DNA of 64,000 bases, taken from contig NC_091289.1 of NCBI RefSeq assembly GCF_032444005.1, positions 156,178,001 to 156,242,000 of the forward strand. The letters are read 5' to 3'. This document shows positions 1-52,914 of the stretch, one piece after another (within the stretch, counting starts at the first letter, position 1; every line of letters starts with the position of its first letter). The position numbers and the translations under genes are program-made. The DNA is from Ranitomeya imitator. Lineage: Eukaryota. The notes beneath the pieces were generated by a model. The model worked only from the letters and a program-made list of their open reading frames with translations, ran no database searches and was not told the origin of the DNA.

Positions 1-3000
1 ACAGCTTGTTCTGCCTTTCTTTCTATCTCTTTCCTTTTAGCAGCTGCAGCACCCTCATAACTGCATGGCCCCTTTCGTCCTCTCTCCTCTGTCCCTCTGA
101 CAGACTGACTGACTTCAGCTCCTGTCTCTGGCAGACTAAATAATTTTCCCTCCAGACCAGAATATACTGTATATAGGGGAGCCACCCACAAGCTGGATAA
201 GAGCTCCCCCTTCTGGCCTGGAGTATGAACATTTTGCATGCTTGTGATTACCTGATAAAAGAGATCCTTCCTCGCTTCCAAGCATGACATCACTCTCCCC
301 GTGAGGAAACAAATGCTACTGTAACAACCAGGAACCTCGGGTGCACAGAAATGGATTCCATTTATCTTTTGATTAAAGGGTTTAGGGCTCATATACCTGT
401 CATTTTTTATATTCTTGCATGCAAAAAAAGACCGATTTTAATCAGAGTGCTTGTTCCGAATTTCATCCATTTTTGGTCTGAGTATCCATTTTTTTACCAT
501 CTTTGTATCATATGTCTTTATCAAATGTAAAAAAAAGGTGATATAGGTTTCTCAAGCATTCTGTAGAATGAGTCGGTGAAAGTCTGACATCACATAGATA
601 CAACTGAGATGATATCCGTGTGCCGTCTCATTTTTTCCACTTACATTTTCATTGACATAAGCTAGTTTGGTCGGCAATTTGGACATTTCTCCATTTTTTA
701 TGCGGACAATTGGTCAACAAATAAAGCCGATATGTGATTACAGTAGATCCATAGAATATAAAATGTTAAGTGATATCACTGACAGATTAGTTCGTGAAAA
801 ACTGTTCTATGCTCATTCATGTCCATTTTGTCCTAATTATTGCAATCTTAAAAACAGACACTACATGGATTGCACATGGACGCAATGTGCCCGTGATTTT
901 CCATGGACCCATAGATGGGTAATTTTGACCCTTGACTTCGATCAAAATGAGACATGTCTCTGTAGGGTTTTTTGCAGGCACACTGTCTAGACATATGAAC
1001 ATAGATTATAATTTCTGTGGGTTCCATCCATGAAAATTCATGGGTAGAACACATATGTGAAAAATGGAAGTCTGAACGAGGCCGCAGACTCCTTGAAGAA
1101 CGCTCTATAGATAAGCGCCTGCTTAGCATCTGATGTTACTGCTGGCCTGACATTTCTAACAGAATAGGCCCGGTTCCTCTGGAGATATGCATGTGTTCTC
1201 CTCATCCTTGTAGACTCTTGCCAGTAATTGGCCATGTTTGTGTGTGCTGTTTCCCTCACGTCATATGTGAACGCCTACTGACTAGAATTGCTCTTCGCTT
1301 GTTGTAACTACTGGGTGTCAGACATCTCTTTGCAATCTTACTCCCACTCACAAGATGATACTCCAGTTTCTTGTCGGTCTAATTTTAAAATGCAATTTCT
1401 TAAAGTGGAGAGAGGAACACATTACCCCACTTACAATTTGTGAAATTGATCTGATTTCCATTTGTAGCCGCAAGGTAGATTAGTCAATGGAATGTAAGAA
1501 TGGAGAATGGCTGGTGCTGTTGCGGTTATCACAATATGCTGTATATTGGTTTACATATTTTCTTGGCTCCCAAACCGCTATAATAACTGAGCGTTGTGAG
1601 GATTCTCCAGTGCCGGTGTTAGGAGCAGGTGGTCATGTGACGGCAGGTATGTGATCTGCATACTTGCGGCCATATTCCGACTAGACTGTATCGGGACGGG
1701 CATTGAGTAAGGCTGTGCCCATCTGGTTAGCACATGGTCACATGTATGCAAATCCCATACTTCAGCCACGCGCCTGCCACCGGCACTGGAGAATCCTCAG
1801 TGTGCTTGCGATGTGAGGATTCTAGTGATGACCGAATATACTCGTTACTCGAGATTTCTCGAGCACGCACGGGTGTCCTCCGAGTATTTTTTAGTGCTTG
1901 GAGATTTAGTTTTCTTCGCCGCAACTGGATAATTTACAGCTTACTGCTGGTGATAGCAGATCACAGGGCAGTCTCCCACAAAATGGCGCTGCCCTGTGAT
2001 GCTACTCTTGATTCTTCCCCAGGGATACTAGATCACCCAAAAGGGGAGGGAAATGGTGATGTCAGCAGTTACTGCCCCAATTTTGCTGCTAACAGTAAAG
2101 CTGGTAAGTCTCACTATAGCTGCTTGAGGTCTAAAACGGAAAATGCTCCCCCTAGTGGTAAATATATATATATTTGTCAGAAAATATATAATATTTTTCA
2201 TAAGGAAATGTTTGCAAACATTGCATTAATACATTTGAATTACTATTTTAGGCTTATTTTCACACAAAAAAAAAATACAAGAAAACTGGTGGGACCTTCC
2301 CTTTAATGCCTGCAAATTAAGCCTGGGATGTGATAAAAGCTCCTGTAGTTGGAATGGTGAGATATCTCAATACATTTGTCCACATAATATATCTATTTTA
2401 CTTTTTTGCATAGGTATATTTTAATTGTTGGGTACCAAAATGCTGTGCAAACATATTATAAGCTTTACATGTAATTGCCCTATAATTTTCAATATTTCAA
2501 CAATTTTTCCATGAGAAGAAACATTATGGTGCACAACAAGTAGAAGAGGTTAAAAAAAAACTTGATTGGTGCTCTTTTTAGAACAAAGCAATGCTCTCGA
2601 TTGGTTGCGCACAGTACTGCAACTCAGTCGCGGGATCAGACAAAATCTGAGCCTGGAAAGTATAGGTCAGTAAATGGTTATAGGTCAGTATTATGGATAA
2701 AAATCTTGAGGGCTTTCAAAGAGATGCTATTCTGGAGTATCTCATAAAGAAAAAACTAATGACACCGTATAAACATGGATTTATGAGGGTTTAATCCGAT
2801 CAAAATAATTTGATCAACTGTGAGGATGCAAGGGGTCAGTATTGGACCCTCTTCTTTTTAACATATTAATTACATTGTAGGGATCATACAGAGTAGAATT
2901 TCAAAATTGGCAGATTATACTAAATTCTGCAATGTAATCAAAACAAAAGAGGATAATTTCATGTTACAGATTTATATAAAATGAAGGTTTGAGCTGAAAT

Positions 3001-3022
3001 ATGGGAATTGAAGATTAATGTA

Positions 3023-3355
3023 CAGTAGATATATATAAGCAGCACAAGGAAAGATCCAGCTCCACAGAATAAAATCTTCTTCATTGGGGAATTAAGTTCA
3101 GTTAGATAGTGAGATTAGAAACATGTCATGACCAAGTTATAAGACATATGCATAGCCCATGGCCATGGCCCAGCTGTCGACACGTTTCTGGTGTTTCCAC
3201 CCTTAAACAAGATTGCCGGTAAATTAATTCACCAATACAGAAGATTGTATTCCATGGAGCTGGATCTTTTCTCATACTGTTTCCACTGCATCTAGGCAAA
3301 GATGTTTTTCCGGAACTATTCGACAGAGTGCGTGAGATGGTCTTTGTCTTTTGCA
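3023..3355. repeat. Old imperfect foldback insertion inside the CR1
   Basis: aaagatccagctcc..aatcttct (~3051-3080) is the reverse complement of agaagatt..ggagctggatcttt (~3238-3270). The CR1 reading (..INV / DKGKVMHLG) resumes on either side. Confidence 0.45.
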
Positions 3356-4058
3356 GATAAAGGTAAGGTCATGCACTTGGGTAGAGGAAGTGAAATGTTT
3401 AATTATGTACTAAATTGTAAAATACTGGGTAAAACACATACTACAAAATGACTTGGACCTATGGGTGGACAGCAAAGTCACCTGTGGTGACCAATGCCAG
3501 GTAGCTGCTGCCAAGTCAAATAAAATTATGGAATGCATTAAAAGAGGCAGGTTATCAAACTTGGGGTCATTCAGTTTGAAAAATTAAGCCTTGGGGTGAT
3601 CTTATTACAATATACAAATATATGAAGGGACAGTACAGAGATCTTTCTTCTGATCTTTTTACACCTGGACCTGCAATGGTGACAAATGAGCATCTTCTAC
3701 ATCTAGCGAAAAGAAGGTTTAATCATAATTACAGACAAATTATTTACTGTAAGAGCAGTAAGATTATGGAACTTTCTGCCGCATGATGTTGTCATGGCTG
3801 ATTCACTACAAAAATACAAGGAAGAACTGGATGCCTTTCATGAAAAATATATTACAGGTTACATTTACTAGATTGTGTGATGGCCCGGGACATTGGTTCG
3901 GGAACTAGTCAGGTTGCCATATATGTGCAGTTGGGAAGTAATTGTTCCCCTAATTTGGGGCTATTAGCATCTGTCCCATGGGATTTTTGTCTTCCTATAG
4001 ATCAACATGTTAGGTTAATGGATGAACTCGAAGGACATAACTCTGCCTTCAACCTTAA

Positions 4059-4651
4059 AGGAAACCTGTCACCGGGTTCCACTAATATGAGATACAGCAA
4101 CCACCTTTCAGGTCTGATATACAGCGTCCTATAATGCTGTATATCTGACCCAAACCTGACCTGCAAGACAAGAAAAAGACCTTTTATTATACTCACCTGC
4201 GAGGAGGTCTGGTCCGGTGATCTTGGTCAGGCGCCTCCCTTTTTGTTGCAATGCCGTCCTCCTTCTTGCTTTGTGTGGATGACATGTCTCTACGTCATCC
4301 ACACAGTCTCCCCAGTATCGCACGCCTGTGCAGGCATATTTCTTTGCCCTGACTAAAGCAGAATAAAGTACTGCAGTGTGCAGGTACCATGAAAGGTCAA
4401 AGAATCCCGGCATGGCGCACTGCATCCACACGAAGCAAGAAGGAAGACAGCATCACAAGAAGAAGGGAGGCGCCGGACCAAGACTAGCAACACCCGTCTG
4501 ACCTGACCACGCCGCAGGTGAGAATAAAAGGTCTTTTTCTTGTCTTGCATGTCAGGTCGGGGGCAGATATACTGCATTATAGAATGTTGTATACCAGGCC
4601 TAAAAGGTGGTGGCCGTATCTCATATCGGTCAAACCTGGTGACAGGTTCAC
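4059..4651. mobile_element. T2/Kolobok-type MITE
   Basis: TTAA at 4055-4058 and 4652-4655; termini aggaaacctgtcacc ... ggtgacaggttcac; same family as 17352-17982. Confidence 0.7.
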
Positions 4652-7395
4652 TTAAAAACCATGAAACTATAGTGTGTACACAATGAAGCCAGATGTAATC
4701 TCCCCAGCTTCATCAGTGCCCAGTACTCACCCAGGCAAGAAAGCGCTCACATATTTCAGATTTAAAATAGTCTGAAGATGGCGTAACTTGTGGGAAGGAC
4801 GTCCATAATGTCCCCCTGAATTACAGGATCTGAGGCTAAACGAGTCTGGGGGAAGCAACATCCCATGATAGAAGTTCTGTCTAAATGGTTTATTACAAGT
4901 GAAAGTCTTTAGGTGGATTTTTAGAAGAAGCCTTCAATGTTTACTTCCATGGAGTAAGGTCATGTGGTCAATTATATGAGTAGATGGCACATGTATTCGT
5001 GCGATTATTACATGGTCAGGAAAAAAATTGTATCTACTGATGAGAGCAAGCAAAGGTCTTGAACGTTAGGGAAGTGAATTTGCAATTAAAAAATATTTTG
5101 AGTTATGTATTTGTTAAATCTAAAGTTTCAGCAATATATTATCAGAGAAAACAACAAGATTTCCAGGACTAACACTCTTCAGCTATTTGTCACTTCCTTC
5201 TGTTACTATTAGAAATGGTCTTCTTTAAACTCTCTGACACCGAGGCCACGATTCTCGTAATCCTCTATAGATTTCGTTATCGAACATTAGTTTATTTTGA
5301 GTTCTCATAATCGAATTAACTTCCATGAACACAAGCTGCAATATTCAATTAGATGCTGCTGCTGTAGGTATCACTGAGGATTAGCATAATTCATGTAGGA
5401 TCTGCCAGCGTCGGCAGTGTTAAGAAGCCTGGTTCATAACCCCATCATAGACAATATGGAAAATCACACATGAAAACTGTACTTTTGCCAATTGTTCTCA
5501 TTGGGTAGGTACCAACAATCTCTAGGGTTTATTTCAGATGTTCAGTTTTTTTCTAATAAGTGAAAAAACGGACCAATTTTCATCAGGGGTTGGTTGAAAT
5601 TTTCATCGATGTTTGGTCTCTGTCAATTTTTTCCATCAGTGTTTCATCGATGTTTCTCAAACAAAAACTTCAAGCTTTTCCTGGCAGTCTGTGAAAAAGC
5701 AGACAGCACACGAATGTGACTAGAATGCCACCAGTTTTTTATGAGCCCGTAGACTTGAATGTGCATTTTTGATCTGAAACTCAGACCAAAATTGGATTTG
5801 TTACTGTGAAAAACATGGTCATGTGAATAATGCCGTAGACTATGATAGACCGGGGTGTACCACCCATAGTGGCAGACCACGCGGCCGCTGTGGGACCTAT
5901 TAGCAGGGGTGGGCTTGGTGCTGAGGGCAACGCCCCTCTCAACTACCCCACCTGTCATTGCAATTTCAACTTTACCCAGCTCCATAGGTTGGCTGCAGAG
6001 CTATCAAACTGTTTGTGGGGTTTCCATACTGTGTTGAGGGCTGTGGGTAGGTACGGACTGGGGCTGAAATTCAGCTCTGACATGTGAAGTTCCACAGGCC
6101 CATGTTGTTCCCGTCCCCAAGCACCAGATGGGATATATTACTAATATTACCCTGGATGGAGGAAAGGAAGATTTACTACAAGACCAATATGATACCCGTG
6201 GTCTGCTGGAGTAAGTGATGGAGTCAGTGACTTTGTGTTCCGTCACAACACTTAACAGTATGGGTGTCTTGAGAACACTGATTTTGTTAAGAACGTAGCA
6301 GACAAGGTAGCCCACGACCAGACAGGCCCTTCTGGCATTTGCCAGAATTCCCAGTCCGGCCCTGGCTGTGAGTGTCTTATACTGAGTGGAGGGCCAAAAT
6401 CTTGGGTCTGGGGACCCTCAAACTGCATGTTGGGGCTTAGGGGACATGATATTGTGTATGGGGCTGTGGTGCCCCTCATACTTTGTGGGGGGCAGGTGGT
6501 GACATTATATAGTGTGTTGGTGCTGTGATATTTTCTCAAGCTGTGTGGTGGAGCATCATGTTGTGTGAGGAATTATACACTGTTGGGGTTACTGTGGTGT
6601 CATCATAATGTGCATGAGGAGGGACAGTGGGGGAAATATTACCGGGGGGTATCAGGGTATAATGGGTCACTTTATAGGCCATGGAGAAGGTATAGTAGTG
6701 GGTGAGAACACTAAACGGCTTCAATAGTGGCATAATTACAGTGTACCTGCCTTAGTATGTGTCCCTCTCTCTGATTTTAAAAGTTGGGAGGTATGACCCT
6801 GCCTATTCTGACAATTTTTTTCTTTTTCATTTGGGGCGGGACAAGTAGAGGAGGATGCCCAACTAAGACTTTTGCTACAGGGCCCTTTGATTTCAATGTA
6901 CATCACTGATGATGATAGGTACAGTATGTTCTCTACCTGTGAACAGCACAGATACAACATGTACACAAAAGGTCACATTCGGACAGACATTGAAAAGTCA
7001 GGTCAGCCTCAACTACAAATTGTGGAGATGAGTGGCTCCAAATGCTCAAGAGCCATCTTCTATTGTCCATAAATCAGACCTGGCACGTTGTAATTTATTC
7101 TAGCACAGAGGCCAGCACTGGCAGCTGACAACACATCGACCAAAAATACATTTGTCTGAACGTACCTAAACATGTATCTAAGCCACAGGGAGAAGTCTTG
7201 TTTTTTGTTTTTTTTTTACACAAGAAAAAAAGGACAATTTTAGATCAGGGTGCTTGATTGATCTATCAGCCAGTTTTGGGCTGTTTGTCAGTTTTTACAA
7301 TCATTGTGACAATTTTTTTACTCCTAGGCAAAAAAAAATTCTATTATATATACACACGCAAACACAGAACATTTCCAAGCTTCTCCCAGCCATTA

Positions 7396-12756: not shown

Positions 12757-13331
12757 CTTTAGTTCCAGGATATCTCAAACCCAATGTTCTAGAGTTTAGC
12801 CAATAACATTCTAGACTGTCTAGTTTATCCCCACTTTTTAAGAATGTCTAATCAAAGGGAGTTCTGGAGATAAGATAACCATACACCTTCAATAGCTTTC
12901 CTGAAAGAACATGTCGAAAGGGAAGAAGGGAATTCTATGGCATGAGACATGTTGAAATCCAAGATGCCCAATCTTTATTTTTACTGACACCTGTCATCAG
13001 ACAGATTTCTTTGCTTGAAGAAGTCTGTTTAAATGTCTTTGTTTTATTTAACTCAATAAGTGCTCTAAATTTCCAGTGATTGGTTGTAGGCTTTAAATCC
13101 ACGCTATTATAAATACACAGCACGGGGTCTAGGCTTCTGCAATCTAGGAGGAACAGGTCTTGTTGGTTTTTGGCTCTCAGGCACAGCCAGGAACCCTTGG
13201 GAGAAGACAGAAGTGGTTAATCTCTGCTTCTGTCTTCTATATCACCAGCTAGTGCACAGAAGCATCCTCAATGCCCATAGATGTTTTATTCCACATAGAT
13301 TGAAATAGCGGCACGCTTTATCACATATTGA

Positions 13332-13767
13332 AGGTCCAATAATAGCTGCTGGAGAAAATAGCGCAAGATAGGGTCTTATCCAAGATAGTTGGGGTTGATA
13401 CAATTAGATTGTACTCTCCAGACGGAGCTATAATTATAGCACGTAAGATTATCCGCTGCAGCAGATCCACCGGTCACAAGGTGACAGAGACTGTAGAAAA
13501 CGAATGGTAAAGCGTGGATATAATCTGCACCGCAGAATGAATGGAGGTCCAGAAATATTCACATGCTACACTGTAGTTTATTCAACACGTTTTGACATAC
13601 AACGACGTCTTCATCAGGAAATGCTACATACATCATGTCTGTGGCATTCCCTGATGAAGAAGCCGTTGTACTTCGAAACGCGTTGAATAAACTACAGTGT
13701 AGCATGTGAATATTGCTGGACCCTCATTCATTCGGCGGCGCAGATTATATCCACGCTTTCCCATTCG
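13332..13767 (+). mobile_element. Foldback, hammerhead-bearing retroelement insertion (Penelope-like pLTR-derived)
   Basis: 14-bp TSD ttatcacatattga (13318-13331, 13768-13781). Unique segment 13332-13500, then inverted arms ~13501-13624 and ~13644-13767, each with a CTGATGA...(G/A)AAAC motif. Confidence 0.75.
13645..13690 (+). ncRNA. Minimal type I hammerhead ribozyme motif
   Basis: CTGATGA (13651-13657), A, stem II GAAG/CTTC with an 8-nt loop, GAAA (13675-13678), palindromic ACGCGT in place of helix III, and GUU. Predicted cleavage is after 13684. Stem I is short and imperfect. Confidence 0.65.
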
Positions 13768-14649
13768 TTATCACATATTGAGGCAGATGGAATGGACACA
13801 AAATTGATAATTGTGTGAGACTATAGGAAGGTCTACCTTCACGCAGAATTTTATAAATGCAGTTAAGCAACATTCTAAATCCTTTTCATTTGGGAATGCT
13901 TTAAAAGGTGAGCAGCGAAAAGAAAAGCCTAAGATACTAGATGGATGGAGTAAACCAAAAGTTAAAATGGGGTTTTCCAAAGGTGGGCAAACCTATCATT
14001 CTTGCTGCTGGAGTACGTGCACAAAATTGCTCTACCATGTACATATCTGCTCTGGGATACTTACACTGTAATATTTGCTAATGGCTGTCTAATGATAGGA
14101 TTTAGACGCTCTGGGCTCCAGGTTAAGCTGAACCAGCAGGAAGCATTGACTGTGTTGTGAAGTTACTGTGACGACGGTTTACACTGGGTGATTGTGACTC
14201 ACGTCTCTCACTTTCATCCAGGAGTCTTACTATTCAGGTGTAATCCTCTTTGTCGCGGTCAGAAATTGTTTATTTACCGAAGAAGAAAAGAAATTTTGAA
14301 TATTGCAGCTTTGCCAAAATTACAGAGAATAGATTTACTTTGCCAAGAATTTTATTTGACATTACGGTTAATAAGTGACAGAAAGCGGAACAAAGGCTAC
14401 GTTACGCTGAATTCCACAGATTGGAGTGCATTCCACCTAGGAAGAGATTTCACAAGGTGACATTTAATGGGATCCGTAGCGACAGCCACTAATAAAATCT
14501 TAATTAAAATGTATCCGTCTTTTTACACAAAACCTGTAGAAAATCATGTTCCTCTGTGACTTAATTCCACATCATAAGTTAAAACTTGGTCTGGTGTTGC
14601 AAGAAGGCAGGAGGTAAGGTCCTAGATGACAGGCAAGTGTTGCTGAGAC

Positions 14650-47747: not shown

Positions 47748-49442
47748 TTAAAGACTGGCATGCGCAACACCAGTCTTAATGAATCTACCCCATTCTGTAT
47801 AGGGACACAACCCCAATTGATAACAGCCAGTTGTCGATTTATTAAAAAAAAATCTAGAAAGAATAATTAAGAAATTGAATACTGCAGACATAAAAAAAAA
47901 AGTATTTTCTAGTGAGTGGTGACAGAGACTCTAAGAAAGTACATGTGTGAGTTTCATTCTTTTTTTTTTTTTGCGGCTTCTATTTCGAAATATTTAATCC
48001 ACCATATTGTGGCCACCGACTAGTGGATTTGGCTGTATCACAACCGTTCTCTGCTTGAGTCTATAGGCTCCTATCTGTCACTTATAAAGGTACAAGGTTC
48101 CGCACAAGGAGAGGGACCCAAACTTATAGCACAGTTACTGGCAATTATTAATGTAGGACAGTGGAGATCAGCTAGGATTCTAGATAATAAAAAAAGGGAA
48201 AGTGGATGAAGCTCACAAATCTGAGAAGTAATCAAATTCTAGGATGGAGATACACGTGGAGGGTGCCGCTTATGTTGGTGAGGCACAGCCATGAAGAGGA
48301 GGAAGAAGGTAGGAGCTCGGCACAATCATCTAATTGGACCGTTTGATGGTTGCTCTGGATTCCTGCCTTCCTCTCCTCTATTCTTCTAGCTAGGGAACTT
48401 CACATTAGCAATATACTGAACGCCCATCTGAACTACATATATCTGTGTGCGTGGCACCCTATAGAAGCTCGACCTATGTGCATGTATCGTACTAAGCAGT
48501 CCCCGCTCATATAGCATCTCCATTCTGCTGGGAACTGGTGCGCGAGCCTGCATTCATATCATTGAGAAGGACCTGCTGAACATTACATTGAGAGGAATCT
48601 CAGCCTCTCTGGCCATGTACTTATTTTAGAAGATAGTTGAAGGAAGGATAATCCGTCTGTCCTCCTCCGGCCATGCCTGGAGGCATAGATGGTACTGGCT
48701 CCATCTGCTCATGTCATGCTGAGCTTACCAGGCGTTCAGTGATGTGTGCACCTTATGGATCCTTCCTAGTCAATTTTTCTAGCGCACGACACATTTACTG
48801 CTCCCACATGCTCTGTAGAAAATACTGATGACACTATTACAAGAAGCAATGCTAGAAAAACATATTAGCAAAGGGGATGCTGAAGGAGTCACAAACTAGA
48901 GGAAAAATGCCACGGAACCCCCTAATGATCTCAAAACCTGCATCAACCTTCCAAGGAGGAGGATGTTCTCCCTTACAGATACATCTATAATAGATCAGAC
49001 ATATCAGAAAAAAAATTGGCTGATTATGTAGGATTTCTGAAAATGAATGGTTGTTTGTGAGGTAGAAATCTCTCTCCTAAAAGGAGCCCATGCACGAGAG
49101 CAATATGAGAAAGCCACAGGAGGACACTTTTGGTAGCAGATCCTGATGAAGAAGTCCTCATTCACATGTCCAATATTCTTGCCTTAACACATTGTGGAGG
49201 AGTCAAATCCGATTTTCTCGTATGTGGAGAAATAACCCCCAAAATTCTCCACCTTCTCTATTCCGACAGTCCATGAAAATTCTGTCATAAGAGTGTGGTC
49301 CGATTTTTTTTCATGGACCCATTTATTTGCATTTCAGATTTTGATCTGACCCTCAGATTAAAATTGGACGTGTCTCCGAGATTTTCTGGGGAGCCCTCGG
49401 TCCAGGAAAAATCACGGCTGTGCTAATGGTCCCATAGACTAA

Positions 49443-51314: not shown

Positions 51315-52914
51315 CAGGTGCTTCTCACAACATTAGAATATTATCAAAAAGTTAATTTATTTCAGCTCTTCAATACAAAAAGTGAATCTCATATTCTACA
51401 GCGTCATTACAAACAGAGTGATCAATTTCACGTGTTTATTTCTGTTAATGTTGAGGATTATGGCTTAGAGCCAATGATAACCCAAATATCATTATCTCAG
51501 TAAATTAGAATACTTTATAACATCAGCTTGAAAAATGATTTTAAAATCCGAAATGTTGGCCTACTGAAATGTATGTTCAGTAAATGCACTCAAAACTTGA
51601 TCGGGGCTTTTTTTGCATCAATTACTGCATCAATGCGGCGTGGCATGGAGGCGATCAGCCTGTGGCACTGCTGAGGGGTTATGGAAGCCCAGGTTGCTTT
51701 GATGGCAGCCTTCAGCTCGTCTGCATTGTTGGGTCTGGTGTCTCATCTTCCTCTTGACAATATCCCATAGATTCTCTATGGGGTTAAGGTCAGGCGAGTT
51801 TGCTGGCGAATCAAGCACAGTGATACTGTTGTTTGTAAACCATGTATTGGTACTTTTGGCAGTGTGGACAGGTGTCAAGTCCTGCTGGAGAATGAAATAT
51901 CCATCTCCAAAAAGCTTGTCGGCAGAGGGAAGCATGAAGTGCTCTAAAATTTCCTGGTAGACGGCTGCGCTGACTTTGGTCTTGATAAAACACAGTGGAC
52001 CTACACCAGCAGATGACATGGCTCACCAAACCATCACTGATTGTGGAAACTTCACACTGGACCTCCAGCAGCTTGGATTGTGGCTTCTCCACTCTTCCTC
52101 CAGACTCTGGGATCTTAATTTCCAAATTAAATGCAAAATTTACTTTTATATGAAAACAACACCTTGGACCACTGAGCAACAATTCAGTTCTTTTTCTCCT
52201 TGGCCCAGGTAAGACGCTTCTCGTGTTGTCTATTGGTCATGAGTGGCTTGACACAAGGAATGCGACACTTGTAACCCAGGTCCTGGATACGCCTGTGTGT
52301 GGTAAATGACGGGAGGTATCACTTATGCGCTGTTGAGATGAAATCGTTACAATCAAATCATTTATTGGAAAAGGTTTACAAGTCAACGCGTTTTGAGGTC
52401 ACGCAGGACCTCCATCAGGTTTGTCCTGAAGAGGTCCTGCGTGACCTGAAACACTTTGACTTGTTAATGTGTTCCAATAAATGATTTGATTTTAACAATT
52501 TCATCTCAGCAGCGCATAAGTGATACCTCCCGTCATGTTCTTCATACCAGTGGTCGCCCTCCATACCGGTACCAGTGCAGCAGCTGTTACATGTCATTCA
52601 TGTGTTGCAATTAAGCAACTCAACAAGGTGAGTGTATCTTACTTTTTCCCCCGACTCCCTATTGTCAATGGATATGACCCTATTGAACTTTTATTCTTCC
52701 CAGTTGTATTTGCATTGTCTGTGTGTGGTGGCTCTTGAAGCAATGACTCCAGCAGCAGTCCACTCCTTGTGAATCTCCCCCAAATTTTTGAATGGCTTTT
52801 CTTGATAATCCTTTCAAGGCTGGGGTTATCCCGGTTGCTTGTGCATCTTTTAGTATTGAAGAAGTTAAATAAATTAACTTTTTGATGATATTCTAATTTT
52901 ATGAGAATCACCTG
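51315..52914 (-). mobile_element. Decayed, internally deleted Tc1 (DD34E), related to 29502-31113
   Basis: TA TSD; termini caggtgcttctcac..attagaata / tattctaattttatgagaatcacctg; remnant MSSAGVGPLCFIK..YQEILEHFMLPSA..QQD-x34-E; frameshifts and stops present. Confidence 0.9.
52304..52718 (-). mobile_element. Second foldback, hammerhead-remnant-bearing insertion (Penelope-like pLTR-derived)
   Basis: 11-bp TSD ctgtgtgtggt (52293-52303, 52719-52729); foldback at 52306-52536; unique segment 52537-52718; motifs CTGAAGA..GAAAC (+, 52426-52452) and CTGATGG..CAAAACGCGTT (-, 52385-52418). Confidence 0.72.

What the first reader, a model, noticed from the sequence alone, without database searches (positions are those of the whole stretch)
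13318..13781. Foldback retro-insertion with back-to-back hammerhead ribozyme motifs, one with an intact core
Seen: a 436-bp insert between 14-bp TSDs, made of a 169-bp unique part plus ~125-bp inverted arms ending exactly at the TSD. The plus arm reads CTGATGA-A-GAAG-ccgttgta-CTTC-GAAA-CGCGTT. The minus arm reads CTGATGA-A-GACG-tcgttgta-TGTC-AAAA-CGTGTT. Stem II shows a compensatory change between arms (A-U to C-G, plus G-C to G-U), suggesting the structure was under selection. The minus copy has G12 changed to A, consistent with CpG decay. AATAAA follows the predicted cleavage site immediately. Established: Penelope-like retroelements carry minimal type I hammerheads in their pLTRs, with a palindrome replacing helix III that is thought to work as a dimer; they often insert with inverted pLTR segments and variable-length TSDs. 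Inference: a non-autonomous, ribozyme-bearing retroelement.
Basis: partly seen in the sequence, partly recalled or inferred. Interest (0 to 1): 0.82.

Follow-up and report, generated by a model that had tools for sequence, protein, structure and literature searches.

The report
Dead hammerhead retrozyme foldback insertion, frog
This is a real but long-dead insertion of a small non-coding mobile element that carries self-cutting "hammerhead" RNA motifs and was laid down head-to-head in the manner of Penelope-like retrotransposons; the kind is already well documented in amphibians, so it is a clean example, not a discovery.

Summary
A 436-bp insert (13332-13767) lies between perfect 14-bp target-site duplications. 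A contig from a related organism carries the empty site. The insert is a 133-nt arm in both orientations, 1 nt apart, plus 169 nt on one side only.

The + arm has a complete hammerhead core: CUGAUGA, an unpaired A, a 4-bp helix II with G10.1-C11.1, GAAA, palindromic ACGCGU and U17. The - arm has G12>A and a broken palindrome.

No Rfam hammerhead model matches. These models do not cover the Penelope-type minimal hammerhead, which matches feature by feature.

The 37-nt box is one of the most repeated pieces of this genome, with matches ending exactly at its edges. A covariance model built from 43 unrelated metagenome hammerheads finds both arms, and both arms of a second foldback at 52304-52718.

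Best reading: a solo, dead copy of a non-autonomous Penelope-dependent element (non-LTR retrozyme type). No helper ORF is in the window and no RNA evidence was found.

The scan had already found and followed up this kind elsewhere in the same genome. It is a new member of a known kind, of low interest. Shared end positions in both elements hint at priming from both DNA ends.

The parts
13318..13331 (.). Left copy of the 14-bp target-site duplication
   Evidence: Identical to 13768-13781. A contig of organism B joins 13317 to 13768 with 14 bases fitting both sides.
13332..13500 (-). 169-nt 3' part ('tail') of the long copy, present at one end only. The element's 3' end is at 13332.
   Evidence: Contiguous with the left arm in other copies (records 14 and 18). 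Depth falls from 1266 near 13356-13383 to about 60 near 13608-13635, as expected for 5'-truncated copies of a minus-strand element.
13368..13382 (-). Conserved 15-mer TGGATAAGACCCTAT, 36 nt from the element's 3' end
   Evidence: The same 15-mer (one A/T difference) lies 35 nt from the 3' end of the second element, and these are the only two matches in the window. The depth peak of the unique part lies over it.
13501..13633 (-). Left arm: the 5' 133 nt of the long copy, read on the minus strand, with a decayed hammerhead
   Evidence: 118/133 identical to the right arm. Covariance model R1 scores 25.1 bits, E 6.6e-6, at 13628-13572.
13584..13617 (-). Decayed hammerhead motif: G12>A (13593) and palindrome ACGCGU>ACGUGU (13587). 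Helix II is GACG/UGUC.
   Evidence: G12 as the general base is established knowledge.
13634..13634 (.). Single base between the two arms (head-to-head junction)
   Evidence: The junction is spanned by a 155-nt contig of the source run (record 7).
13635..13767 (+). Right arm: inverted second copy of the same 133 nt. It ends at the TSD, 83 nt after the predicted cut.
   Evidence: R1 scores 33.6 bits, E 8e-9, at 13639-13696.
13651..13684 (+). Hammerhead motif with a complete core: CUGAUGA, unpaired A13658, helix II 13659-13662/13671-13674, GAAA 13675-13678, palindrome ACGCGU 13678-13683, U17 13684. The predicted cut is after 13684.
   Evidence: In a cofold of two copies, the MFE structure pairs AACGCGUU between the molecules and is 7.5 kcal/mol more stable than two monomers.
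13768..13781 (.). Right copy of the 14-bp target-site duplication
52293..52729 (+). Second, diverged element of the same architecture. TSD CTGTGTGTGGT at 52293-52303 and 52719-52729. Inverted arm 52304-52420, direct arm 52422-52538, one-sided 180-nt tail 52539-52718. Both hammerheads are decayed.
   Evidence: R1 scores 16.8 bits (E 0.005) on the + arm and 11 bits (E 0.44) on the - arm. The 15-mer box is at 52669-52683.

Best explanation
The insert is one old, dead insertion of a roughly 300-nt non-coding retroelement. That element carries a type I, Penelope-style minimal hammerhead near its 5' end (a non-LTR retrozyme, or pLTR-only Penelope derivative).

The long copy lies on the minus strand, from 13633 to 13332. 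It has the hammerhead at positions 17-50 and a conserved 15-mer 36 nt before its 3' end. A second, inverted copy of its first 133 nt (13635-13767) abuts its 5' end head-to-head.

Shown here:
- It is a lineage-specific insertion with a 14-bp TSD.
- The hammerhead box is a conserved, massively repeated module.
- The motif has the defining features of the Penelope minimal hammerhead.

Inferred:
- It was copied in by target-primed reverse transcription, using a Penelope-like RT/GIY-YIG enzyme supplied in trans.
- Both staggered DNA ends served as primers. One started at the element's 3' end. The other started at an internal site 83 nt after the hammerhead cut.
- Both cDNAs ran to the RNA's 5' end and were joined there.
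- In active family members the hammerhead has no stable helix III of its own. It would cut after GUU only when two copies pair through ACGCGU (the dimer model), possibly with protein help.

This copy does nothing. One hammerhead has lost G12 and its palindrome, and the other has a weakened helix I. Any read-through RNA would fold into a 133-bp hairpin instead.
For: Insertion:
- Perfect 14-bp TSD.
- Empty-site contig in organism B, joint 13317>13768 with 14 shared bases.

Motif:
- Sequence read directly.
- Descriptor scan gives 1 hit against 0.03 expected.
- The unpaired nucleotide after A9, G10.1-C11.1 and the palindromic helix III match the features listed in PMC4209133.

Family:
- Summed depth is 2600-6750 on 13636-13691 against about 14 for the flanks, with loose ends at 13649/13650 and 13685/13686 in three data sets.

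Independent family:
- Among the matches in the 85 metagenome loci, 53 have the same 1+4+8+4 layout.
- Of these, 43 were aligned. Their helix II covaries: 95.6% of cells paired against 23-42% when the partners are slid, and 5 pairs change on both sides.
- The model built from them ranks the four hammerhead copies of this window 1st, 2nd, 3rd and 5th.

Architecture:
- Two of those loci are head-to-head foldbacks with 15-16-nt TSDs and a 23-30-nt extension at one end. PMC8557442 describes this layout for Penelope-like elements.
- The Anolis Penelope enzyme cleaves and extends both strands. It starts reverse transcription internally, 85-92 nt after the hammerhead cut (PMC11167929).
- Here the inverted arms end 83 nt (this element) and 81 nt (second element) after the cut.

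Class:
- Non-LTR retrozymes occur in all seven amphibians sampled, average 316 bp, and derive from Penelope pLTRs (preprint 10.64898/2026.07.22.740005).
- Amphibian hammerheads need dimers to cut efficiently (PMC7229834).

Against: - No Rfam hammerhead model matches, even at E<=10 on a 76-nt stretch.
- No Penelope RT/GIY-YIG ORF was found among the ten longest ORFs of the window, and the rest of the genome could not be searched. The helper is therefore inferred from the literature and from unchecked notes of this scan.
- No RNA run holding the element was listed, so transcription, cleavage and circles are untested.
- The R1 model was trained on sequences selected with a pattern taken from the + arm. 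Its score on that arm is partly circular.
- Self-cleavage of Penelope minimal hammerheads is weak in vitro (PMC4209133) and is not needed for insertion in vitro (PMC11167929).
- This locus is a monomer plus an inverted piece, not the tandem array that defines active retrozymes.
Confidence: 0.85

Rival explanations
1. Same element and same helper, but the foldback arose by snap-back. A single cDNA reached the 5' end of one RNA, folded back and copied itself. The two arms were then identical at insertion and the right arm's outer end is arbitrary.
For: - Only 1 nt separates the arms.
- The arms share several states that differ from the wider family, at 13531, 13693, 13703, 13727 and 13729.
- Arm divergence of 11.3% is just within the 12.4% divergence of the flank between the two organisms.
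Against: - The inverted arm ends at homologous places in two independent insertions, 83 and 81 nt after the cut. This is close to the internal RT start of the Anolis enzyme.
- A 900-nt contig of organism B matches 13635-13766 only, with the same boundaries (record 24).
- Nine of the 15 arm differences fall in the first 47 nt. They include a paired A-U/C-G double transversion that keeps helix II intact, which is unlikely by neutral decay (my estimate p about 0.02).
- The TSDs are still perfect.
Confidence: 0.35
2. The conserved box is kept not as a self-cleaving ribozyme but as a binding or positioning module for the Penelope protein, or for some other role. Cleavage would be incidental or absent in vivo.
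For: - Low in vitro activity of Penelope minimal hammerheads.
- Anolis catalytic mutants still insert in vitro, and no RNA-seq reads start at the cut.
- Eight of nine Xenopus dimer constructs did not cleave.
- Neither element here has an end at the predicted cut site.
Against: - Exactly the catalytic nucleotides and the helix pairing are conserved across frog and metagenome families, with covariation in helix II.
- The C3G/G8C rescue experiment in Anolis shows genuine ribozyme chemistry, assisted by protein.
Confidence: 0.2
3. A SINE-like element mobilised by a LINE (L1, L2 or CR1), with a twin-priming 5' inversion. The hammerhead-like motif would be irrelevant to its mobility.
For: A 14-bp TSD and a 5' inversion also occur with L1-type target-primed reverse transcription (established knowledge).
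Against: - No poly(A) or microsatellite 3' tail and no tRNA-derived head.
- Classic twin priming inverts a more upstream segment rather than duplicating the same 133 nt.
- The same architecture travels with the same hammerhead in unrelated genomes.
Confidence: 0.04
4. A chance motif inside a DNA-transposon foldback (MITE), or an assembly artefact.
For: Long inverted repeats are typical of foldback DNA elements.
Against: - The insert ends are not inverted repeats of each other.
- TSDs of 14 and 11 bp are not a fixed DNA-transposon length.
- The junction is spanned by an independent contig.
- The descriptor expectation is 0.03 per window, and the box is conserved genome-wide.
Confidence: 0.01

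Closest known systems
Minimal type I hammerheads of metazoan Penelope-like elements (Cervera & De la Pena 2014, PMC4209133; about 9,000 in Xenopus tropicalis)
   Same: - CUGAUGA and GAAA boxes.
- One unpaired nucleotide between A9 and G10.1, and a G10.1-C11.1 pair.
- No stable helix III, with a palindromic 15.1-16.1 stretch in its place (ACGCGU), which implies action as a dimer.
- Short helix I.
- Motifs often found as pairs on opposite strands 100-700 bp apart, mostly outside full elements.
   Different: - Helix II is only 4 bp, whereas those authors describe 6-8 bp in the schistosome and fly families.
- No Penelope ORF is linked to this copy.
- Activity is untested.
Non-LTR retrozymes of amphibians (Cervera & De la Pena 2020, PMC7229834; Li, Clavereau & Pollet 2026 preprint, 10.64898/2026.07.22.740005)
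   Same: - Non-coding unit of about 300 nt (302 here; the amphibian mean is 316).
- Type I hammerhead with a one-base-pair helix III capped by a palindromic tetraloop, so it depends on dimers.
- Derived from Penelope pLTRs.
- Many solo 'monomer' copies dispersed in introns and intergenic DNA.
   Different: - Retrozymes are defined by tandem arrays and circular RNAs. This locus is one unit plus an inverted partial copy, and no RNA evidence was found.
- TSDs and foldback layout are not described for retrozymes in those papers.
Penelope/Poseidon insertion architecture (Craig et al. 2021, PMC8557442; Frangieh et al. 2024, PMC11167929)
   Same: - An inverted copy abutting the 5' end.
- An extension ('tail') at one end only.
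- TSDs of variable length.
- The short arm's end lies 81-83 nt after the hammerhead cut, against 85-92 nt for the internal RT start of the Anolis element.
   Different: - The one-sided extension is 169-180 nt here, not 30-40 nt.
- The element has no ORF.
Extra nucleotide after A9 in the CChMVd (+) hammerhead (De la Pena & Flores 2001, as cited in PMC4209133)
   Same: An unpaired base between A9 and 10.1 is tolerated in a natural, active hammerhead.
   Different: That is a viroid type III hammerhead and is not related by descent. My account of its details rests on memory, apart from the citation in PMC4209133.

Membership tests
Hammerhead ribozyme as modelled in Rfam (Hammerhead_1, _3, _II, HH9, HH10) | Covariance-model match at or near the gathering score | tested here: not met
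   No hammerhead match at E<=10 on 2 kb or on 76 nt, and none at gathering score in the whole window. This is expected, because these models require a closed helix III.
Penelope-type minimal hammerhead (PMC4209133) | Catalytic boxes CUGANGA and GAAA, and a non-G at position 17 | tested here: met
   The + arm at 13651-13684 is complete. The - arm fails at G12 (13593).
Penelope-type minimal hammerhead (PMC4209133) | [quoted passage not shown] | tested here: met
   A13658 in the + arm and its counterpart in the - arm. The metagenome family has U (42) or C (2) at the same place among 44 distinct sequences.
Penelope-type minimal hammerhead (PMC4209133) | G10.1-C11.1 closing pair of helix II | tested here: met
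   G13659-C13674 in the + arm, and G-C in the - arm as well.
Penelope-type minimal hammerhead (PMC4209133) | Palindromic 15.2-16.2 and loop 3, allowing a helix III formed between two molecules | tested here: met
   ACGCGU at 13678-13683. In a cofold of two copies the MFE structure pairs AACGCGUU between the molecules, at -27.9 against -20.4 kcal/mol for two monomers. The palindrome is broken in the - arm (ACGUGU).
Penelope-type minimal hammerhead (PMC4209133) | Short helix I (4-5 bp) flanking the core | tested here: inconclusive
   The - arm gives 3 bp, then an internal loop, then 4 bp (UUC/GAA and GUAG/CUAC). The + arm has two of these pairs disrupted, at 13643 and 13649.
Penelope-type minimal hammerhead (PMC4209133) | Large intragenomic families with covariation | tested here: inconclusive
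   Massive repetition of the box, with sharp edges, is shown, but individual frog copies could not be retrieved for counting pairs. Covariation was shown only in the metagenome family.
Penelope-type minimal hammerhead (PMC4209133) | Self-cleavage, as a dimer | not testable with these tools
   This needs in vitro transcription.
Non-LTR retrozyme | Non-coding unit of roughly 170-400 nt carrying a type I hammerhead | tested here: met
   The long copy is 302 nt (13633-13332). The longest ORF touching the insert is 60 aa.
Non-LTR retrozyme | Head-to-tail tandem arrangement in the genome | tested here: not met
   This locus is one unit plus an inverted 133-nt copy. It corresponds to what the 2026 preprint calls monomer derivatives.
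Non-LTR retrozyme | Expressed as linear and circular RNAs | tested here: inconclusive
   No RNA run holding the stretch was listed. This is not evidence of silence.
Non-autonomous Penelope-like element | Penelope insertion signature: TSD of variable length, inverted copy at the 5' end, extension at one end only | tested here: met
   TSDs of 14 and 11 bp, head-to-head arms, and one-sided 169- and 180-nt parts in two independent insertions.
Non-autonomous Penelope-like element | Sequence shared with the pLTR or 3' end of an autonomous RT+GIY-YIG element of the same genome | not testable with these tools
   No such ORF among the ten longest ORFs of the window. The genome outside the window cannot be searched. 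Earlier notes of this scan mention Penelope elements in this genome, but they are unchecked.
DNA transposon, MITE or foldback element | Terminal inverted repeats at the insert ends and a TSD of fixed short length | tested here: not met
   The insert ends are unrelated to each other. TSDs are 14 and 11 bp.
LINE-dependent SINE | tRNA/7SL/5S-derived head, and a poly(A) or microsatellite tail | tested here: not met
   No tRNA-like gene and no A-rich or simple-repeat 3' end.

The most novel reading that the evidence does not exclude
The two foldbacks in this window may be genomic footprints of double-ended target-primed reverse transcription by a Penelope enzyme on a non-autonomous RNA with two fixed start sites about 170-180 nt apart.

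One start site would lie 35-36 nt after a conserved 15-mer, TGGATA(A/T)GACCCTAT. The other would lie 81-83 nt after the hammerhead cut.

The two arms would have been copied from two different RNA molecules, perhaps the two partners of a hammerhead dimer. That would explain the pairing-preserving differences in helix II between the arms. If so, the in vitro behaviour of the Anolis enzyme would extend to natural insertions of retrozyme-like elements, and the hammerhead dimer would gain a role in pairing templates.
Probability: 0.3. Interest if true: 0.5.

Novelty: new member of a known kind. Interest (0 to 1): 0.25.

Why it matters
As a class this is known. Hammerhead-bearing Penelope derivatives fill amphibian genomes, and this copy is dead, so it changes nothing about the host gene or about ribozyme biology.

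It has modest value as a well-resolved specimen. It has an empty site in a relative and exact boundaries, and a sister insertion 39 kb away has the same layout. Together they point to reproducible start points for reverse transcription and to priming from both DNA ends. A genome-wide survey could test this, and it would bear on how Penelope-like elements build their odd inverted structures.

It also shows that Rfam hammerhead models miss this whole class. A negative model search must therefore not be read as refutation.

Tried and rejected
- Rfam searches at three scales gave no hammerhead. The only notable match was mir-5014 at 61 bits, below its gathering score of 101. I rejected it as a generic long-hairpin match.
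- BLAST of the insert against the window found no second close copy, only the hammerhead fragment at 49133-49156.
- An exact-box scan of metagenome contigs found nothing. The looser pattern worked.
- Pfam scans found Tc1 transposase only among the window's longest ORFs. In the metagenome loci they found an APE-type LINE in L008 and an unclassified RVT_1 in L025, with no GIY-YIG domain. A protein-atlas look-up of the L025 RT gave only generic RT clusters. I ran no further search on classifying it.
- An RNAalifold fold of the shared 3' box in the two elements gave no convincing structure (-0.65 kcal/mol, no covariation).
- The RNA-run search listed no holder.
- Look-ups in earlier findings by sequence, and by Penelope/GIY-YIG words, returned nothing.
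- I did not build any consensus or repaired version of the element.
Full report
**1. What is in the sequence**

The 14-mer TTATCACATATTGA occurs at 13318-13331 and again at 13768-13781, identical in both places. It brackets a 436-bp insert, 13332-13767.

Inside the insert, 13501-13633 and 13635-13767 are reverse complements of each other. They are 133 nt each, ungapped, 118/133 identical, with a single base (13634) between them. The remaining 169 bp (13332-13500) are unique within the insert. The ends of the insert are not inverted repeats of each other, and there is no A-rich or simple-repeat end. There is no tRNA-like part. The longest ORF touching the insert is 60 aa.

**2. It is a genuine, lineage-specific insertion**

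I laid contigs of public runs on 13132-13967.

- The source organism's contigs cover the whole stretch with 0-1 differences. One 155-nt contig spans the head-to-head junction, so the foldback is not an assembly artefact.
- In a second organism (coded B), one 310-nt contig matches 13133-13317 (23 differences and 1 gap) and then continues directly at 13768. Fourteen bases fit either side of this joint. This is the empty site with a single copy of the 14-mer.
- The insertion therefore postdates the split of the two lineages, or was polymorphic at that time.
- It is nonetheless old. The arms differ by 11.3%, against 12.4% for the flank between the two organisms.

**3. The hammerhead motif**

On the + arm the order of parts is:

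- C2.1 at 13650
- CUGAUGA at 13651-13657
- an unpaired A at 13658
- helix II, GAAG/CUUC, at 13659-13662 and 13671-13674, around an 8-nt loop
- GAAA at 13675-13678
- CGCG, then U16.1 and U17 at 13683 and 13684
- G1.1 at 13685

A15.1 through U16.1 reads ACGCGU, which is a palindrome. A single molecule cannot close helix III, but two molecules can form it between them.

Folding supports this:

- A monomer forms helices I and II.
- In a cofold of two copies, the MFE structure pairs AACGCGUU between the molecules. It is 7.5 kcal/mol more stable than two monomers.

A descriptor for the full motif finds this site alone in the window. The descriptor requires the boxes, 0-1 bulged base, a helix II of at least 4 bp, a palindromic helix III and a non-G at position 17. 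It finds 0.03 sites per simulated window.

The - arm carries the same motif with three kinds of change:

- G12>A, which is a CpG transition. G12 is the general base of the reaction (established knowledge).
- C>U inside the palindrome, also at a CpG.
- Helix II reading GACG/UGUC.

The + arm is not fully intact either. Its helix I 5' strand differs from the - arm at 13643 and 13649. At 13649 most other family copies agree with the - arm.

**4. Why the negative Rfam result does not refute it**

No Rfam hammerhead family matches at any scale. Cervera & De la Pena (PMC4209133) had to design a special descriptor for exactly this reason, because Penelope hammerheads lack helix III.

They list four features, not built into their descriptor, that mark genuine members:

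- large families with covariation
- a G10.1-C11.1 pair
- a palindromic 15.2-16.2 and loop 3

The last three are met here by direct reading.

The first is met in part. The 37 bases 13650-13686 have a summed contig depth of 2600-6750, against about 14 for single-copy flanks. This holds in the source organism, with lower but similarly peaked values in organism B and in a third data set. Dozens of contigs break off at 13649/13650 and 13685/13686 into unrelated sequence. The box is thus a module shared by many different repeats, with edges that coincide with the motif.

**5. An independent family**

A scan of metagenome contigs for CCTGATGA-N12-24-GAAACGCGTTGA returned 85 loci. Fifty-three matches have a 17-nt middle part laid out exactly as here: 1 unpaired base, 4 bp, an 8-nt loop and 4 bp. 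Most come from a handful of projects, presumably from animal host DNA. I could not identify the organism.

I aligned 43 of them.

- Helices I and II are 95.6% paired, against 23-42% when the partners are slid.
- Five pairs change on both sides.

A covariance model built from these sequences (R1) was run on the window with filters off:

| Hit | Bits | E-value | Rank |
|---|---|---|---|
| + arm of this element | 33.6 | 8e-9 | 1 |
| - arm of this element | 25.1 | 6.6e-6 | 2 |
| + arm of the second element | 16.8 | 0.005 | 3 |
| - arm of the second element | 11 | 0.44 | 5 |

The training set was selected with boxes taken from the + arm, so its own score is partly circular. The other three hits are not.

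**6. Architecture and likely mechanism**

Other copies keep the left arm contiguous with the 169-nt part (records 14 and 18). Depth falls steadily from 13356-13383 to 13608-13635. This is the gradient expected from 5'-truncated copies of an element that lies on the minus strand with its 3' end at 13332.

The basic unit is therefore 302 nt (13633 to 13332), with the hammerhead near its 5' end. The right arm is an inverted second copy of its first 133 nt.

It has the same plan:

- TSD CTGTGTGTGGT at 52293-52303 and 52719-52729
- inverted arm 52304-52420
- direct arm 52422-52538
- one-sided 180-nt part 52539-52718

The two elements are only weakly alike overall, but they share three things:

- the hammerhead, ending ...AAACGCGUU|GA in each
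- the end of the short arm, 83 and 81 nt after the predicted cut
- an exact 15-mer, TGGATA(A/T)GACCCTAT, lying 36 and 35 nt before the 3' end. The depth peak of the unique part lies over this 15-mer.

Two metagenome loci show the same head-to-head layout, with 15-16-nt TSDs and a 23-30-nt extension at one end.

This is the published Penelope signature: an inverted copy adjacent to the 5' end and a 'tail' at one end only (PMC8557442). It fits the biochemistry of the Anolis element (PMC11167929):

- That enzyme cleaves and extends both DNA strands.
- It starts reverse transcription at internal sites 111-118 nt into the ORF.
- The hammerhead cut lies 26 nt into the ORF, so the start sites are 85-92 nt after the cut.

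I therefore favour priming from both ends, using two start sites, over a simple snap-back. Both remain open. The snap-back reading is supported by the 1-nt spacer and by the states the two arms share against the family.

**7. The compensatory change**

The arms differ at 15 positions, and nine of these lie in the first 47 nt. The + arm's box equals the pan-family majority. No variant of 10% or more is listed there, despite the highest depth of the stretch.

The - arm departs from that majority at six positions:

- two are a paired A>C / U>G double transversion
- one is a C>U that leaves a G-U pair
- two are the inactivating CpG transitions, G12>A (13593) and C>U in the palindrome (13587)
- one is a C>U in loop 2 (13605)

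By my rough estimate, a pairing-preserving double transversion arising by neutral decay has a probability of about 0.02. Selection cannot have acted on this dead copy. The observation makes sense only if the two arms were copied from two different, then-functional templates. This is suggestive, but it is a single case read after the fact.

**8. What it does now**

It does nothing that can be inferred. One hammerhead lacks G12 and the palindrome, and the other has a weakened helix I. A transcript through the locus would fold into a 133-bp hairpin of -189 to -200 kcal/mol, which would outcompete the ribozyme fold.

AATAAA does follow the cut by one base. It forms part of the helix I 3' strand. 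AUAAA-like strings also recur after the cut in the frog pan-family and in the metagenome family. Whether they serve as polyadenylation signals is unknown.

**9. Comparison with the known, and novelty**

- Minimal hammerheads in Penelope pLTRs, with about 9,000 motifs in Xenopus, are described in PMC4209133.
- Retrozymes in amphibians that depend on hammerhead dimers are described in PMC7229834.
- The derivation of vertebrate non-LTR retrozymes from Penelope pLTRs is described in preprint 10.64898/2026.07.22.740005. It reports an amphibian mean unit of 316 bp and many solo monomers.

Earlier follow-ups of this same scan reached the same verdict for other loci of this genome. Those notes describe the genome as a poison frog's.

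This is a new member of a known kind. The link to a helper RT could not be tested, because no such ORF is in the window. No RNA evidence was found.

Noticed in passing
window 49133-49156 (+): A 22-nt relic matching the helix I 5' strand, CUGAUGA, the unpaired A and GAAG of this hammerhead (the 13-mer CCTGATGAAGAAG is exact). Unrelated sequence follows. It is probably the stump of another hammerhead-bearing element.
   Followed up: no
window 52293-52729: A second foldback hammerhead insertion of the same architecture: 11-bp TSD, 117-nt arms and a 180-nt one-sided part. It shares with the first element a 15-mer at the same distance from the 3' end. Both of its hammerheads are decayed.
   Followed up: partly
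window 13650-13686 (contigs of runs X1 and X2): In some contigs of the source organism the 37-nt hammerhead box recurs after a 14-nt spacer (CTTCTGTGGTTTAT), giving a 51-nt period at summed depth of about 120-145. This may be a tandem mini-repeat made of little more than the ribozyme. The 2026 preprint gives 51 bp as the shortest retrozyme consensus.
   Followed up: no
window 13188-13243: A piece of another high-copy repeat just upstream of the insertion (summed depth 430-840 against about 14). It contains a 12-nt inverted repeat at 13202-13213 and 13227-13238.
   Followed up: no
window 13558-13710 (-): An Rfam mir-5014 match of 61 bits (E 3e-12), below the gathering score of 101. It is a generic long-hairpin match to the foldback, not evidence of a microRNA.
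   Followed up: partly
L006:5822-6228 and L057:888-1320: Metagenome contigs, probably animal host DNA, carry head-to-head hammerhead foldbacks with 16- and 15-nt TSDs and 30- and 23-nt one-sided tails. The L006 copy sits inside another hammerhead foldback.
   Followed up: partly
L025:2718-3341 (-): A reverse-transcriptase ORF fragment (RVT_1, E 1e-28) lies about 3.5 kb downstream of a hammerhead on the same strand. No GIY-YIG domain was found, and the RT was not classified as Penelope-type.
   Followed up: partly
   Followed up: no
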